A stretch of 13,794 bases of DNA from Octopus sinensis. Lineage: Eukaryota. Below the pieces are notes generated by a model that searched no databases, was not told where the DNA came from, and worked only from the letters and a program-made list of their open reading frames with translations. The position numbers and the translations under genes are program-made. Shown here piece after piece: positions 1 through 13,022 of the stretch. Location of the stretch: the NCBI RefSeq assembly GCF_006345805.1, contig NW_021826102.1, positions 1 to 13,794 on the forward strand, written 5' to 3'. The stretch's first letter is position 1; each line of letters begins with the position of its first letter.

Positions 1-130
1 TGTTATCGATCGCCTTCGCCACCATCACGCCAACCACCACAACCTCCACCATCACCATTGTTACCAACCACCATCAGTACTACCACTACAACCTCCACCA
101 CCACCACCATCACCGACGCCTACACCCTAA
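1..130. repeat. Degenerate (CAC/ACC)n low-complexity tract
   Basis: C/A-rich triplets such as ACCACCACAACCTCCACCATCACC; ACAACCTCCACCA occurs twice (39-51 and 88-100). Confidence 0.8.
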
Positions 131-374
131 ACACTACCCCTCCATCGCCAGCAATAGTTACTACATGCACCACCAACGAGCCTAAAACGGAGACCTCTAT
201 GTGGTCGCTCGGCTTTCTAGAAATAACAGCAATAGCCTCCCTCATTTCATACCTGAAAGCAAAAGAAACATTGAACACTATAAACACTTCATATGCAAAA
301 CAGCCGGGATGGGTGGCCAGCGTGGAATGTCTTTGATCACATGTCTCATTGACCAGGCGCATCGAGGACAGTAA

Positions 375-413
375 CATCATCATGATTATGATCATGATCA
401 TCATCATCATTAT
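375..413. repeat. Imperfect (CAT/GAT)n microsatellite
   Basis: CATCATCATGATTATGATCATGATCATCATCATCATTAT read directly. Confidence 0.85.
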
Positions 414-621
414 CCTTATTAAACTGCATCACTAACCAATCCAACACCAACCGCACCGGCATCACCATCGCCACCGGCACCGTCAGTACAACGTCGTTCC
501 GCTTTCACGCCGACCACAGCCAACAGACTCTCGTCCGTTACTAGCAGCAGTGAGCGATGCCAGCAGCCGACAATTAAGAGACTCTCCAGCAACCGCGTGT
601 AACAACCCCTTTGCACATGCC

Positions 622-661
<40 letters not shown>

Positions 662-663
662 CA
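622..663. repeat. (CAGG)10 tetranucleotide microsatellite
   Basis: Ten perfect CAGG units at 622-661; source of the ACLPACLP pseudo-ORFs. Confidence 0.97.
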
Positions 664-879
664 CACGTATCCATATAAGACGCGCGGGCGCGCACGGATA
701 TAAGAAAAGGGATGGATGAGCATTAACAAAGACTGTATTTGGCGAGGGAAGAGGGGGTTGAGCAGAGGAGTTAATATACTGATATATAGGATGGTAGGGG
801 AGGAGAGTAAGACAAGGGGAGTAAGGCGAGCAGGGGTTGAGGAAACTGTTGGCAAAGGGGATATTCTTATTTGTACCTT

Positions 880-1233
880 TAAGAAGTTTGCTTACCAACC
901 ACATGGATCCGGGTACACTCCCACTGCGTGGCACCTTCGGAAAGTGTCTTCCACTATAGCCTGGGCCGACTAAAACAATGTGAGTGGATTTGGTAAGAGG
1001 AAACTGAAAGAAGCCCAACATGTGTGTGCGTGTGTGTGTGTTTGTTCCCCACCACTGCTTGACAAGTGGTGTCAGTGTGTTTACGTCCCCATAACTTGGT
1101 GGTTCGGCAAGAGAGACCGATAGAATAAGTACTAGGCTTTAAAAATTACTAAATAAAAACCGGAGTTGATTTGTTAGGGAAGTGCTACAACATGGCCGCA
1201 GTGTAATGACTGAAGAAAGTAAATTACAAAAGA
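880..1233 (+). mobile_element. tRNA-derived SINE (here called family B), nearly full length, head slightly truncated
   Basis: Decayed tRNA-like head (GGGTACACTCCC for the B box), then GGAAACTGAAAGAAGCCC, internal (TG)n at 1021-1040, GGTTCGGCAAGAGAGACCGATAGAATAAGTAC, and tail CATGGCCGCAGTGTAATGACTGAA. The same blocks recur at 5224-5460, 7541-7602, 7786-7860 and 12826-13204. Matches my recollection of an abundant Octopus SINE. Confidence 0.85.
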
Positions 1234-2983: not shown

Positions 2984-3571
2984 AGAGAGTGACTAATAAA
3001 GAATGTGTGGTGAGAGGGGTTAAAACTGTGTGGCCCATCGTTAGCGAATGCTCGAAACTGGTACAACGCGATGACAAAAGACGACATGGCAATGTAGTTT
3101 GAATGCTCCATTGGGAGCTGTGTGGAAACCACAACCGACAAAGATGTGGTAGGAGCAAAGCCCAGAAGGAGCTACCGAGAATGAAAACTACAAAATGTTG
3201 TGTGACACAATGATTCAGTACGATAACCTGACCAGACATCAGAAACTGGATATTGTTGTCGTGAATAAAAAAGAAAGAACATGCATGCTGATCAAGAGAA
3301 ACTGAACAACTCTTACGATTTGAAGTGGGAAATACGAAGGTGGTGGTCAATGAGGAGAGTAGACGTGGTACCTACAGTAATTGGCGAACTTGGAGGTATA
3401 AGTACTCAACGACCAGCATTGGTAAAATAAGATTCATACACCTGCGAAGGTAGAACACCTAAGAAAATCAACAAAAATTCTTAGCAGGGTTCTTACAGCA
3501 TGACCAGTAAAACGGGTGTCACCTTAGTCTGCTCGCTGTCATGCGTCAAAATAAACTGTGCATTTTCATAA
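2984..3571 (+). mobile_element. Decayed RLE non-LTR retrotransposon 3' end (R4/Dong-like), copy A
   Basis: Across frameshifts and stops: RMCGERG-KTVWPIVSECSKLVQRDDKRRHGNVV*MLHWELC (CCHC-type knuckle), ENENYKMLCDTMIQ, KLDIVVVNKKERTCMLI (PD motif, 3243-3263), EKLNNSYDLKWEIRRWW, VVPTVIGELG, ILSRVLTA* (stop 3501-3503). AATAAA at 3550-3555, then an (AAC/AAT)n tail. Confidence 0.9.
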
Positions 3572-3655
3572 AACAACAACAACAATAACAACAACAATAA
3601 TAATGATAATAATAATAATATAATAATAATGATAATGATAATAATAATAATAATA
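3572..3655. repeat. (AAC)n(AAT)n microsatellite between LINE copies A and B
   Basis: Read directly. Confidence 0.95.
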
Positions 3656-3964
3656 GTTGAGCGCTTGACGGCAACTGTGCAGATGATTAGCGAAGATATT
3701 GGCGTGGAATGTGGGATCGGGAAATGTGGTATAATGATTCTCAAAAGAGGGAGAACCAGTAAAAGCCACGGGATCAAGCTGGAAAGAGGTGAAGCTATAA
3801 AGGAAGTCGGGGAGGATGGATATAAGTACCTGGGTATCATTGAAAAAGATTAGATGGATAAACACACGATGAAAGAAATGAAGAGTAAAGAGTATATGAG
3901 AACTCGGCTTGTGCTCCAATCGAAGCTAAATGGCCGCTATAAGATTAGAGCAATTAACACGGGG
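3656..3964 (+). mobile_element. Decayed reverse-transcriptase fragment of an R4/Dong-like non-LTR element, copy B
   Basis: VERLTATVQMISEDIGVECGIGKCGIMILKRG...GYKYLGIIEKD*...KEYMRTRLVLQSKLNGRYKIRAINT. The YKYLG motif (3821-3835) and the SKLNG..KI.AINT thumb motif are typical of R4-clade RTs. Confidence 0.9.
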
Positions 3965-4405: not shown

Positions 4406-4522
4406 CTTCTTCTTCTTCTTCTTCTTCTTCTTCTTCTTCTTCTTCTTCTTCTTCTTCTTCTTCTTCTTCTTCTTCTTCTTCTTCTTCTTCTTCTTCTTCT
4501 TCTTCTTCTCCTAATTATTATA

Positions 4523-4561
<39 letters not shown>

Positions 4562-4629
4562 GTTGTTGTTCTTGTCGTCGTCATCATCAGCATCATCATC
4601 ATCATTATCATCATCATTACTATTATTAT
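4406..4629. repeat. (CTT)34 followed by in-phase ATT/GTT/GTC/ATC compound microsatellite
   Basis: 34 perfect CTT units at 4406-4507; later triplets remain in the same register. Confidence 0.97.
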
Positions 4630-7028: not shown

Positions 7029-7159
7029 CAACAGCACCAACACCACCAACAGCACCAACACCACCAACAGCACCAACACCACCAACAGCACCAACACCAC
7101 CAACAGCACCAACACCACCAACAGCACCAACACCACCAACAGCACCAACACCACCAACA
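7029..7159. repeat. Perfect 18-bp minisatellite (CAACAGCACCAACACCAC) x7.3
   Basis: Seven identical units starting at 7029, 7047 ... 7137, plus CAACA. Each unit is a dimer of the 9-mers CAACAGCAC and CAACACCAC. Confidence 0.97.
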
Positions 7160-8580: not shown

Positions 8581-8604
8581 GTTCTAATGTATGGTTTAGT
8601 GGTA

Positions 8605-8745
8605 AATATTGATATCAAATTTTGGCACAAGGCCAGCAGGTTCAGACGAGCCCTTACATCCGTCATATTGACCCTCAGTGCTCAGCTGGTATTTAGTGTA
8701 TGGACCCCGAAAGAGATGAAAAGTAAAGTTCAACTCGGTGGAATT
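8605..8745 (-). mobile_element. SINE family C copy 2 (minus), 5'-truncated
   Basis: AAATTTTGGCACAAGGCCAGC...CAGCTGGTA...GACCCCGAAAG...CTCGGTGGAATT. Confidence 0.75.
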
Positions 8746-8757
8746 AGTTTAGTGATT

Positions 8758-8950
8758 AATATTGGTTTCAAGTTGGTCACAAATTTTGGCGCTGAGTCAG
8801 CAAGGGGCAGGGTCGATTTTACTGACCCATGTACTCAAACTGAACTTATGTTGTCGCCCCCAAATGGTGAAAGACAAATTCGACTTCAGCGGAATTTGAA
8901 CTCAGAGCGTTAAGACTGACGAAATACCGCAAACGATTCTGCCAGATCCC
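8758..8950 (-). mobile_element. SINE family C copy 3 (minus), head retained
   Basis: AATATTGGTTTCAA...GGGTCGAT...CAGCGGAATTTGAACTCAGAGCG...GACGAAATACCGC...ACGATTCTGCCAG. Confidence 0.8.
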
Positions 8951-8967
8951 TGAAGTATATTAATGAT

Positions 8968-9111
8968 AATAACGGTTTCAAATTTGGGCACAAGGCCAGC
9001 AATTTCGGGGAAGAAGTTTCGTCAGTTACTTCGAACTCAGTGCTCAACTGGTACTTAATTTATTGACCGCAAAAGGGATGAATCAAAGGCAAAGTCGACC
9101 CAGACGGGATT
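8968..9111 (-). mobile_element. SINE family C copy 4 (minus), 5'-truncated
   Basis: GGTTTCAAATTTGGGCACAAGGCCAGCAATTTCGGGG...CTCAACTGGTACTTA...AAAGGCAAAGTCGACC...GGGATT. Confidence 0.8.
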
Positions 9112-9245
9112 ATTTTAGCCGTGAATATTAATTGTAATTCTTCATTTGAGTTTACTGTTATGAGTTTCAATACAAAGATTATTTGTGTTTAAATTCGCCT
9201 GCCAAATTCACTATACATCCAATGAAGCATGTAATATACGACTAC

Positions 9246-9263
9246 ATCAAATATCACTATGGA
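9246..9263 (+). repeat. Left boundary direct repeat of the satellite
   Basis: ATCAAATATCACTATGGA, 16/18 identical to 12609-12626. Contains ATATCACTATG, the reverse complement of the monomer core CATAGTGATAT. Confidence 0.85.
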
Positions 9264-12200
9264 CGCAGAGTAATGTCATATAAAATATGGACGCATAGTG
9301 ATATCATATAAAATATGGACGCATAGTGATATATAAAATATGGACGCATAGTGATATCATATAAAATATGGACGCATAGTGATATATAAAATATGGACGC
9401 ATAGTGATATCATATAAAATATGGACGTATAGTGATATCATATAAAATATGGACGCATAGTGATGTCATATAAAATATGGACGCATAGTGATATATACAA
9501 TATGGACGCATAGTGATATATAAAACATGGACGCATAGTGATATCATATAAAATATGGACGCATAGTGATATCATATAAAATATGGACGCATAGTGATGT
9601 CATATAAAATATGGACGCATAGTGATATATAAAATATGGACGCATAGTGATATCATATAAAATATGGACGCATAGTGATATATAAAATATGGACGCATAG
9701 TGATATCATATATAATATGGACGCATAATGATATCATATAAAATATGGACGCATAGTGATATCATATAAAATATGGACGCATAGTGATGTCATATATAAT
9801 ATGGACGCATAGTGATGTCATATAAAATATGGACGCATAGTGATATCATATAAAATATGGACGCATAGTGATGTCATATAATATGAACGCATAGTGATGT
9901 CATATGAAATATGGACGCATAGTGATATATAAAAAATGGACGCATAGTGATGTCATATAAAATATGGACGCATAGTGATATCATATAAAATATGGACGCA
10001 TAGTGATATCATATAAAATATGGACGCATAGTGATATCATATAAAATATGGACGCATAGTGATGTCATATAATATGGCCGCATAGTGTTATCATATAAAA
10101 TATGGGCGCATAGTAATATCATATAAAATATGGACGCATAGTGATGTCATATATAATATGGACGCATAGTGATATCATATAAAATATGGACGCATAGTGA
10201 TGTCATAAAATATGGACGAATAGTGATATCATATAAAATATGGACGCAAAGTGATGTCATATATAATATGGACGCATAGTGATATTATATAAAATATGGA
10301 AGCATAGTGATATAATATATATGGACGCATAGTGATATATAAAATATGGACGCATAGTGATATCATATAAAATATGGACGCATAGTGATATCATATAAAA
10401 TATGGACGCATAGTGATGTCATATAAAATATGGACGCATAGTGATATATAAAATATGGACGCATAGTGATATATAAAATATGGACGCATAGTGATATCAT
10501 ATAAAATATGGACGCATAGTGATATCATATATAATATGGACGCATAGTGATGTCATATAAAATATGGATGCATAGTGATATATAAAATATGGACGCATAG
10601 TGATATCATATAAAATATGGACGCATAGTGATATCATATAAAATATGGACGCATAGTGATGTCATATATAATATGGAAGCATAGTGATGTCATATAAAAT
10701 ATGGACGCATAGTGATATCATATAAAATATGGACGCATAGTGATGTCATATAATATGAACGCATAATGATGTCATATAAAATATGGACGCATAGTGATGT
10801 CATATATAATATGGACGCATAGTGATATCATATAAAATATGGGCGCATAGTGATGTCATAAAATATGTACGCATAGTGATATCATATAAAATATGGACGG
10901 ATAGTGATATATAAAATATGGACGCATAGTGATATCATATAAAATATAGACGCATAGTGATGTCATATAAAAAATGGACGCATAGTGATATATAAAATAT
11001 GGACGAATAGTGATGTCATATAAAATATGGACGCATAGTGATATCATATAAAATATGGACGCATAGTGATATCATATAAAATATGGACGCATAGTGATAT
11101 CATATAAAATATGGACGCATAGTGATGTCATATAATATGGCCGCATAGTGATATCATATAAAATGTGGGCGCATAGTAATATCATATAAAATATGGACGC
11201 ATAGAGATGTCATATATAATATGGACGCATAGTGATATCATATAAAACATGGACGCATAGTGATGTCATAAAATATGTCCGCATAGTGATATCATATAAA
11301 ATATGGACGCAAAGTGATGTCATATAAAATATGGACGCATAGTGATATCATATAAAATATGGACGCATAGTGATATCATATAAAATATGGACGCATAGTG
11401 ATGTCATATAAAATATGGACGCATAGTGATATATAAAATATGGACGCATAGTGATATATAAAATATGGACGCATAGTGATATATAAAATATGGACGCATA
11501 GTGATATCATATAAAATATGGACGCATAGTGATGTCATATAAAATATGGACGCATAGTGATATATAAAATATGGACGCATAGTGATATCATATAAACTAT
11601 GGACGCATAGTGACATATAAAATATGGACGCATAGTGATATCATATATAATATGGACGCATAATGATATCATATAAAATATGGACGCATAGTGATATCAT
11701 ATAAAATATGGACGCATAGTGATATCATATATAATATGGACGCATAGTGATGTCATATAAAATATGGACGCATAGTGATGTCATATAAAATATGGACGCA
11801 TAGTGATATCATATAAAATATGGACGCATAGTGATGTCATATAATATGAACGCATAGTGATGTCATATAAAATATGGACGCATAGTGATGTCATATATAA
11901 TATGGACGCATAATGATATCATATAAAATATGGACGCATAGTGATATCATATAAAATATGGACGCATAGTGATGTTATATATAATAATGGACGCATAGTG
12001 ATATCATATAAAATATGGACGCATAGTGATGTCATAAAATATGGACGCATAGTGATATCATATAAAATATGGACGCATAGTGATATATAAAATATGGACG
12101 CATAGTGATATCATATAAAATATGGATGCATAGTGATGTCATATAAAATATGTACGCATAGTGATATATAAAATATGGACGAATAGTGATGTCATATAAA

Positions 12201-12608
12201 ATATGGACGCATAGTGATATCATATAAAATATGGACGCATAGTGATATCATATAAAATATGGACGCATTGTGATATCATATAAAATATGGACACATAGTG
12301 ATGTCATATGATATGGCCGCATAGTGATATCATATAAAATATGGGCGCATAGTAATATCATATAAAATATGGACGCATAGTGATGTCATATATGATATGG
12401 ACGCATAGTGATATCATATAAATTATGGACGCATAGTGATGTCATAAAATATGGACGCATAGTGATATCATATAAAATATGGACGCAAAGTGATGTCATA
12501 TAAAATATGGACGCATAGTGATATCATATATAATATGGACGCATAGTGATATCATATAAAATATGGACGGATGGTGATGTTATATCAAATAACGACGCAT
12601 AGTGATAT
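9258..12608. repeat. 3.35-kb tandem satellite/minisatellite, consensus ATATGGACGCATAGTGAT(A/G)TCATATAAA (28 bp) with 25-bp and 26-bp variants
   Basis: Head-to-tail monomers with no unique spacers; roughly 120-125 units, estimated from length rather than counted. The 25-mer is ATATGGACGCATAGTGATATATAAA. The first and last two units are the most diverged. Confidence 0.98.
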
Positions 12609-12626
12609 ATCAAACATCACTGTGGA
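12609..12626 (+). repeat. Right boundary direct repeat of the satellite
   Basis: ATCAAACATCACTGTGGA. ACATCACTGTG folds back on the last monomer core (12598-12608): 9 Watson-Crick pairs plus 1 G-T out of 11. Confidence 0.85.
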
Positions 12627-12865: not shown

Positions 12866-12950
<85 letters not shown>

Positions 12951-12989
12951 ACACACACACACACACAAACATACACACACACATACACA

Positions 12990-13022
<33 letters not shown>

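What the first reader, a model, noticed from the sequence alone, without database searches (positions are those of the whole stretch)
9246..12626. Satellite apparently born from a collapsed palindrome: both boundaries keep an inverted copy of the monomer core
Seen: the array is bracketed by an 18-bp direct repeat (ATCAAATATCACTATGGA at 9246-9263, ATCAAACATCACTGTGGA at 12609-12626). Its middle 11 nt are antisense to the monomer core: the left copy exactly matches the A variant (CATAGTGATAT), the right copy matches the G variant (CATAGTGATGT) with one mismatch. So the array starts with a potential ATATCACTATG-GACG-CATAGTGATAT hairpin (perfect against consensus, degenerate in the first unit) and ends in a hairpin at 12598-12624. 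The ATCAA spacer survives only at the left boundary and in the last two units. Inference: removing the array leaves about 1.6 copies of a 31-bp unit, ATCAA-ATATCACTATG-GACG-CATAGTGATAT. Deleting CACTAT (TAT microhomology) and changing ATCAA to ATAAA gives exactly the 25-bp monomer; inserting CAT gives the 28-mer. The path would be palindromic seed, then hairpin collapse, then amplification of the non-folding derivative. Alternatively, hairpin-capped ends could mark a mobile or rolling-circle unit, since Helitron/Helentron-type elements are known to carry central tandem arrays in molluscs.
Basis: partly seen in the sequence, partly recalled or inferred. Interest (0 to 1): 0.75.

Follow-up and report, generated by a model that had tools for sequence, protein, structure and literature searches.

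The report
Minisatellite keeping its birth-site scars
A 3.4-kb tandem array of 25-28-bp units in non-coding animal DNA still carries at both edges the short repeated sequence it probably grew from, a tidy but ordinary example of how minisatellites are born.

Summary
A 123-unit head-to-tail array (9262-12624; units of 28, 25 and 26 bp) is bracketed by an 18-nt direct repeat (9246-9263 and 12609-12626, 16/18). Each copy holds an antisense copy of the unit core. Both features exceed chance. The 18-mers are the unit's own tail (ATAAAATATGGA) plus six extra bases, CACT(A/G)T, and a C. So the edges are archaic partial units or original flank, as expected where homogenisation does not reach. The best reading is in situ minisatellite birth from a ~49-bp seed with two non-contiguous direct repeats (Haber-Louis type). 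The array then grew by multi-unit duplications into three ~40-unit blocks. The "palindrome collapse" step is not required: one 25-bp duplication of the seed gives the same product. The left "hairpin" does not exist in the actual sequence, and the right one is weak. Nothing supports a Helitron/Helentron: no terminal inverted repeats, no CTRR end, and the wrong unit size and copy number. The decisive tests are an orthologous empty site and a search for other arrays. They could not be run, because the public collections reachable here lack this organism; a control scan for the flank SINE also found nothing. This is a new member of a known kind, of modest interest.

The parts
9246..9263 (+). Left boundary 18-mer ATCAAATATCACTATGGA. 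It is the unit tail plus the 6-nt CACTAT. Positions 9251-9261 are the exact reverse complement of the unit core CATAGTGATAT.
9262..9289 (+). Unit 1, a 28-bp G-variant unit with two private substitutions (GACGCAGAGTAATGT...). These substitutions destroy the predicted left hairpin.
9262..12593 (+). Body of the array, units 1-122, all head-to-tail. Consensus units are GACGCATAGTGAT(A/G)TCATATAAAATATG (28 bp) and GACGCATAGTGATATATAAAATATG (25 bp).
9371..10323 (+). Higher-order block 1, about units 5-39.
10324..11333 (+). Higher-order block 2, about units 40-76.
11334..12565 (+). Higher-order block 3, about units 77-121.
12566..12593 (+). Unit 122, an archaic 28-type unit GACGGATGGTGATGTTATATCAAATAAC. 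It keeps ATCAA, has TAT where other units have CAT, and is 6 edits from consensus.
12594..12624 (+). Unit 123, the only complete 31-nt form: GACGCATAGTGATAT + ATCAAACATCACTGTG.
12609..12626 (+). Right boundary 18-mer ATCAAACATCACTGTGGA, 16/18 identical to the left one.
12598..12624 (+). Weak potential hairpin CATAGTGAT / ATCACTGTG: 9 pairs including one G-T, 9-nt loop, -4.5 kcal/mol, z -2.07.
9203..9214 (+). Possible third, decayed copy of the boundary motif (CAAATTCACTAT). Marginal and not established.

Best explanation
This is a non-coding minisatellite that arose where it now lies.

The ancestral site (inferred) was about 49 bp: ATCAAATATCACTATG-GACGCATAGTGATAT-ATCAAACATCACTGTGGA. That is two 18-nt non-contiguous direct repeats 31 bp apart. 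Each contains the reverse complement of the 11-nt sequence that lies between them.

Inferred steps:
1. Replication slippage or unequal exchange at these repeats made the first extra copy.
2. The repeat junction that spread lacks CACT(A/G)T. It was made either directly, by a 25-bp duplication at AT/TAT microhomology, or by a 31-bp duplication followed by a 6-bp deletion. The product is the same either way.
3. A 3-bp insertion gave the 28-bp unit, and C-to-A gave ATAAA.

Shown by the sequence:
- The array then grew mostly by duplication of multi-unit blocks, giving three ~1.1-kb blocks of about 40 units.
- Homogenisation did not reach the right-hand terminal units or the flanking 18-mers, which therefore keep the old state.

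No function is indicated. I take it to be a neutral repeat locus.
For: - The 18-mers match 16/18, with none of 3000 nulls reaching that value.
- Twelve of their 18 bases are the unit's own tail, and the 31-nt form aligns to the 25-mer with one 6-nt gap and one mismatch.
- The 6 extra bases plus C are present at both ends and in none of the interior units (1-121).
- Unit 122 is intermediate: it has ATCAA but no CACTAT.
- Divergence is 6 edits for each of units 122 and 123, against an interior mean of 0.78. This is the known edge effect (PMC5615363).
- The block structure scores 41.5, against 11.3 +/- 2.0 for shuffled unit order (0 of 200), with 97-98% identity between paired units.
- One 25-bp duplication of the joined flanks reproduces the founder unit with 2 mismatches.
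- The Haber-Louis birth model is summarised in PMC6947457.
Against: - No empty or short allele and no second locus could be examined. All scans of public DNA and protein collections were empty, and the control scan for the flank SINE was empty too.
- The simple in-register version of the model predicts 31-bp units, and none is found in the interior.
- The leftmost unit is of the derived type, so the edge relics are one-sided.
- The order of the 25-bp and 28-bp forms is ambiguous.
Confidence: 0.6

Rival explanations
1. A tandem 31-mer (palindromic) stage existed and was unstable because it formed hairpins. A 6-bp deletion in one arm collapsed the hairpin, and only this non-folding derivative could amplify. 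In this view hairpin potential is causal.
For: - A 31-mer dimer folds at -17.7 kcal/mol (z -7.1). The 25-mer and 28-mer dimers fold at -4.0 and -5.8 kcal/mol (z -1.3 and -1.5).
- In-register slippage has 8/9 bases of homology at the nascent end, against 2-3 for the direct 25-bp duplication (from the sequence).
- The deletion is flanked by TAT microhomology.
Against: - No 31-mer survives in the interior.
- The end product is identical to that of a single 25-bp duplication, so the extra step is not demanded by the data.
- Arms of 11 bp are short for palindrome instability in vivo (my own knowledge).
- A 3-nt microhomology is trivial in AT-rich DNA.
Confidence: 0.2
2. The array is the central tandem array of a mobile element or rolling-circle unit (Helitron/Helentron-like or other). 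The hairpin-forming boundaries would be part of the element.
For: - There is a weak hairpin at the right boundary.
- Mollusc Helentron derivatives do carry central arrays plus a microsatellite (PMC7492417).
- A (CA)n tract lies 240 bp to the right.
Against: - There are no inverted repeats between the flanks: score 22 against a null of 18.7 +/- 2.2.
- There is no hairpin-plus-CTRR 3' end.
- The left hairpin is absent from the real sequence.
- Units are 25-28 bp in 123 copies, against 140-180 bp and at most 29 copies in the oyster elements.
- The hairpin arms are simply unit sequence.
- Microsatellites are everywhere in this window.
Confidence: 0.08
3. The two 18-mers are a target-site duplication made when a pre-formed array was inserted, for example by LINE-type retroposition or reintegration of a circle.
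For: An 18-bp length is within the range of target-primed insertions (my own knowledge).
Against: - A target site should be unrelated to the insert. Here 12 of the 18 bases are the unit tail and 11 are an exact antisense copy of the core (p about 0.0015).
- There is no poly-A tail or other insertion hallmark.
Confidence: 0.03
4. The six extra bases were added at the edges after the array formed. The mechanism would be template switching that 'corrects' the quasi-palindrome ATATG-GACG-CATAGTGATAT to a perfect one.
For: Every unit junction is such a quasi-palindrome, and templated correction is a known mutation class (my own knowledge).
Against: - It would have to occur at both edge junctions and at none of the 122 junctions between units.
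- At the right edge the result is CACTGT, not the templated CACTAT.
Confidence: 0.03
5. The junctions, or the array length and order, are assembly artefacts.
For: Arrays of short units are hard to assemble, and there is no read evidence here.
Against: The array has many private variants and a structured, non-periodic block order, as well as unique degenerate edge units. This is not what a collapsed or invented repeat looks like.
Confidence: 0.05

Closest known systems
Minisatellite birth by slippage or unequal exchange between short non-contiguous direct repeats (Haber & Louis 1998, as summarised in PMC6947457; Taylor & Breden 2000, from my own knowledge)
   Same: The array is bracketed by a short direct repeat that is also the end of the unit. 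The unit size (25-31 bp) and array size fit. The predicted ancestral site is repeat, unique piece, repeat.
   Different: - The flanking repeats are long (18 nt against the usual 5-10 nt).
- Each contains an inverted copy of the intervening sequence.
- The amplified unit is 6 nt shorter than the in-register model predicts.
Array-edge effect: terminal repeats escape homogenisation and stay divergent (McAllister & Werren 1999, cited in PMC5615363)
   Same: Units 122 and 123 and both boundary 18-mers keep a state absent from the interior. Each of units 122 and 123 has 6 edits, against an interior mean of 0.78.
   Different: The effect is one-sided. The leftmost full unit is of the derived type.
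Higher-order repeat structure of satellite DNA
   Same: Three ~40-unit blocks at 97-98% identity between paired units, against a mean of 2.7 edits between random unit pairs.
   Different: There are only three blocks, with unit-level insertions and deletions between them. The array is 3.4 kb, not a long heterochromatic array.
Helentron-derived non-autonomous elements with central tandem arrays in oysters (Cg_HINE, PMC7492417)
   Same: A mollusc-type genome (assumed), a tandem array with a palindrome at one side, and a microsatellite nearby.
   Different: There are no subterminal inverted repeats. Units are 25-28 bp against 140-180 bp, and there are 123 copies against at most 29. The palindrome is made of unit sequence.
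Pause-melting misalignment model for the birth of mitochondrial tandem repeats (PMC3599147)
   Same: In that model a pause in replication lets the nascent strand melt and re-pair out of register, so that repeat units are inserted or deleted. The seed's hairpin potential could provide a comparable pause here.
   Different: That model concerns mitochondrial control regions. Here it is only an analogy, with no direct evidence.

Membership tests
Minisatellite (tandem array of 10-100-bp units) | Unit of tens of bp, repeated head-to-tail | tested here: met
   Units of 25, 26 and 28 bp in 123 copies, all in one orientation.
Minisatellite (tandem array of 10-100-bp units) | Array of 0.1-20 kb in non-coding DNA | tested here: met
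   The array is 3.36 kb. No ORF in the window has a Pfam domain.
Minisatellite (tandem array of 10-100-bp units) | Copy-number variation between individuals | not testable with these tools
   No other individual or species is available.
Haber-Louis type in situ birth | Array bracketed by a short direct repeat that overlaps the unit end | tested here: met
   The repeat matches 16/18, with none of 3000 nulls reaching that value. Twelve of the 18 bases are the unit tail.
Haber-Louis type in situ birth | Unit equals one flanking repeat plus the intervening sequence (31 bp here) | tested here: not met
   Interior units are 25-28 bp and lack CACT(A/G)T. An out-of-register duplication or a later deletion is needed.
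Haber-Louis type in situ birth | Orthologous pre-expansion site: repeat, unique piece, repeat | not testable with these tools
   The collections lack this organism. The control scan for the flank SINE also found nothing.
Classical satellite DNA | Higher-order periodicity | tested here: met
   Unit-level self-alignment scores 41.5, against 11.3 +/- 2.0 for shuffled unit order.
Classical satellite DNA | Many long arrays and high genomic abundance | not testable with these tools
   There is only one array in the 13.8-kb window. No genome is available.
Helentron/Helitron-derived element with a central array | Subterminal inverted repeats of 11-12 bp in the two flanks | tested here: not met
   The best inverted match between the flanks scores 22, against a null of 18.7 +/- 2.2. 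The feature is taken from PMC7492417.
Helentron/Helitron-derived element with a central array | 3' palindrome, or a hairpin followed by CTRR | tested here: inconclusive
   A weak hairpin of unit sequence is present (-4.5 kcal/mol, z -2.07). No CTRR-T lies within 60 nt of it.
Helentron/Helitron-derived element with a central array | Units of about 140-180 bp and few copies (at most about 30) | tested here: not met
   Units are 25-28 bp in 123 copies.
Helentron/Helitron-derived element with a central array | Many copies with conserved flanks | not testable with these tools
   No genome is available.
Insertion with target-site duplication | Flanking repeat unrelated to the inserted sequence | tested here: not met
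   The repeat is homologous to the unit tail and antisense to its core.

The most novel reading that the evidence does not exclude
The seed was a three-arm alternating inverted repeat (antisense, sense, antisense). A tandem 31-mer made of it was too hairpin-prone to persist. The satellite could expand only after a 6-bp deletion broke one arm. If so, this locus would be a preserved record that secondary-structure potential gates which sequence can become a satellite.
Probability: 0.15. Interest if true: 0.5.

Novelty: new member of a known kind. Interest (0 to 1): 0.3.

Why it matters
Loci that still show the sequence a tandem array grew from are useful teaching cases for how minisatellites and satellites start. 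This one makes an exact, cheap prediction: a 49-bp empty allele. Its seed happens to be palindromic, so it could serve as a natural test of whether hairpin potential helps or hinders repeat birth. There is no sign of a gene, an RNA, a mobile element or any cellular function. Without comparative data it adds one example, not a new principle.

Tried and rejected
1. **Orthologous or other copies via protein searches.** I used junction-spanning and flank ORFs and array ORFs as protein queries. Neither returned a hit. Non-coding eukaryotic ORFs are evidently not in that collection.
2. **Two-unit DNA pattern scans.** Metagenome, viral and prokaryotic genome collections all returned nothing. The palindromic seed also returned nothing in genomes.
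3. **Positive control.** The conserved SINE core from the left flank returned nothing in the metagenome collection. The empty scans therefore say nothing about whether the locus is unique.
4. **Literature string search for the unit.** No papers hold it. A search for octopus satellite papers found nothing relevant.
5. **A decayed older unit in the left flank (9203-9247).** My first test gave 0 of 3000, but I had chosen the segment and phase after seeing the hit. An unbiased test gave p = 0.09-0.14. I reject it as established and keep it as marginal (p about 0.03).
6. **Array born inside a SINE copy.** The joined flanks show no similarity to the neighbouring SINE-like copies beyond their overlap.
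7. **Other scans.** Rfam and tRNA scans of the window found nothing. Pfam found nothing in 8 ORFs.
8. **BLAST self-comparison of the array.** It did not discriminate, giving about 90-92% at every shift. I replaced it with unit-level alignment.
9. **A first significance script timed out** and was rewritten.

Full report
**Observation.** The window holds one large tandem array. Tandem Repeats Finder reports 9258-12608, period 28, 122.7 copies and 89% matches. Splitting at the conserved core GACGCATAGTGAT gives 123 units from 9262: 89 of 28 bp, 21 of 25 bp, 11 of 26 bp, one of 29 bp and a last unit of 31 nt. The left one contains the exact reverse complement of the A-variant core. The right one differs from the reverse complement of the G-variant core at one base. 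On the + strand this antisense motif occurs only at these two places in all 13.8 kb. ATCAA occurs only in the left boundary and in units 122 and 123. Against a first-order Markov model of the flanks, none of 3000 pairs of 78-nt zones reach 16/18 (maximum 15). An exact antisense 11-mer of the unit appears in such a zone with p about 0.0015.

**What the boundaries are.** Twelve of the 18 bases are the unit's own tail: ATCAAATAT..GGA against ATAAAATATGGA. What sets the boundaries apart is six extra bases, CACTAT on the left and CACTGT on the right, plus a C. Adding those six bases to the tail is what creates the antisense copy of the core. The 31-nt form aligns best with the 25-mer, with one 6-nt gap and one mismatch, and less well with the 28-mer. 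This state is present at both ends and in none of the interior units (1-121). Unit 122 is intermediate: it is 28-type, has ATCAA, and lacks CACTAT. Units 122 and 123 are 6 edits from the nearest consensus, against an interior mean of 0.78, and unit 1 is 2 edits away. This is the familiar edge effect, in which terminal repeats escape homogenisation (PMC5615363, citing McAllister & Werren 1999). "Bracketed by a direct repeat" therefore means that the array begins and ends in the same archaic partial unit, or in the original flank.

**How the array grew.** Unit types recur in long ordered runs. A unit-level local alignment pairs units 25-78 with 64-121 (97.4% identity between paired units). It also pairs units 6-24 with 77-96 (98.1%) and units 5-23 with 40-55 (98.6%). 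The best score is 41.5, against 11.3 +/- 2.0 (maximum 22.5) for 200 shuffles of unit order. The array is about three copies of a block of roughly 40 units (about 1.1 kb), with small unit-level gains and losses between them. This points to unequal exchange or segmental duplication on top of slippage. All 25-mers carry the A variant and all 26-mers the G variant, which suggests single origins for these length variants.

**Hairpins.** As single-stranded DNA, the real left boundary plus unit 1 folds at -2.9 kcal/mol (z -1.25), so it is not a hairpin. The -9.0 kcal/mol stem (z -7.7) exists only against the consensus unit. The real right boundary folds at -4.5 kcal/mol (z -2.07; 6 of 200 shuffles do as well). 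Dimers of the 25-mer and 28-mer are unremarkable (-4.0 and -5.8 kcal/mol; z -1.3 and -1.5). A dimer of the 31-mer would fold at -17.7 kcal/mol (z -7.1). The claim that the amplified derivative does not fold is correct. The claim of hairpin-capped ends is weak.

**Birth models.** Joining the flanks at a unit boundary gives the 49-nt seed ATCAAATATCACTATGGACGCATAGTGATATATCAAACATCACTGTGGA. It consists of two 18-nt direct repeats 31 bp apart, and its three arms alternate antisense, sense, antisense. This layout is the one Haber and Louis proposed for minisatellite birth (summarised in PMC6947457). The in-register version predicts 31-bp units, and none survives in the interior. Two paths give the same first product. 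The other is a single duplication of the 25-bp segment GGACGCATAGTGATATATCAAACAT, which is preceded by CACTAT and followed by CACTGT. The second needs one event fewer. The first has more homology to drive it (8 of 9 bases against 2-3). The present sequence cannot separate them. Because unit 122 is 28-type yet still has ATCAA, the 28-bp form arose early. The present 25-mers, which all have ATAAA, may be secondary deletions rather than direct descendants of the founder (inference).

**Rivals.**
- A target-site duplication is rejected because the repeat is homologous to the insert.
- Templated correction of a quasi-palindrome at the edges would have to occur at both edges and at none of the 122 junctions between units.
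- A Helitron/Helentron-type element fails the tests I could run. There are no inverted repeats between the flanks (score 22 against 18.7 +/- 2.2) and no hairpin-plus-CTRR end. The unit size and copy number are far from those of the oyster elements: 140-180 bp, mostly 5 units or fewer, and at most 29 (PMC7492417).
- The joined flanks are not part of the neighbouring SINE-like copies.
- A possible third copy of the boundary motif at 9203-9214 is only marginal: p about 0.03 and 0.09-0.14 in an unbiased lenient test. My first test was biased by post-hoc choice.

**External evidence.** None could be obtained. Protein searches with junction, flank and array ORFs gave nothing. DNA scans of metagenome, viral and prokaryotic genome collections gave nothing. 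A control scan with the conserved core of the flank SINE also gave nothing, so these collections do not contain this kind of organism. The negatives are therefore uninformative about uniqueness. No paper holds the unit sequence.

**Verdict.** The feature is real and accurately described. It is best explained as an in situ born minisatellite that keeps its seed at the edges. The palindrome-collapse story is possible but not required, and the mobile-element story is unsupported. It is a new member of a known kind, of modest interest.

Noticed in passing
window 8590-9135: Three to four head-to-tail copies of a SINE-like repeat of about 180 bp, with cores 82-83% identical. The last copy ends about 110 bp before the array. 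From memory they resemble abundant octopus SINEs; no tool verified this. ARAGORN and Rfam found nothing.
   Followed up: partly
window 9203-9214: CAAATTCACTAT lies 45 bp upstream of the same motif in the left boundary, with a core-like GCATGTAATATA between them. It may be an older decayed unit, but it is only marginally significant (p about 0.03; 0.09-0.14 in an unbiased test).
   Followed up: yes
window 7029-7159: A perfect (100%) 18-bp tandem repeat, CAACAGCACCAACACCAC, in 7.3 copies. It is made of two 9-bp half-units that differ at one base.
   Followed up: no
window 4406-4617: A compound microsatellite: a perfect (CTT) run of 34.7 copies, followed directly by (ATT)16 and (TCA)12.
   Followed up: no
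window 12868-13022: A (CA) run of about 77 copies, 240 bp to the right of the array. The window as a whole is very rich in microsatellites (27 Tandem Repeats Finder rows).
   Followed up: no
window about 3200-3850, + strand: Frameshifted reading-frame pieces that look like the tail of a retroelement polyprotein, for example ...KYLGIIEKD and ...DIVVVNKKERTCMLI. Pfam found no domain, so this rests on my recollection only.
   Followed up: partly
window 1-1000: A GC-rich stretch (48-52%, against 25-43% in the rest of the window) with (CAGG)10.5 at 622-663. It contains a 200-aa ORF with no Pfam match.
   Followed up: partly
window 9860-12453 (11 units): All 26-bp units carry the G variant and fall into two kinds of 2-nt deletion (GTCATATAATATG and GTCATAAAATATG). 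They recur at matching positions in the higher-order blocks.
   Followed up: partly
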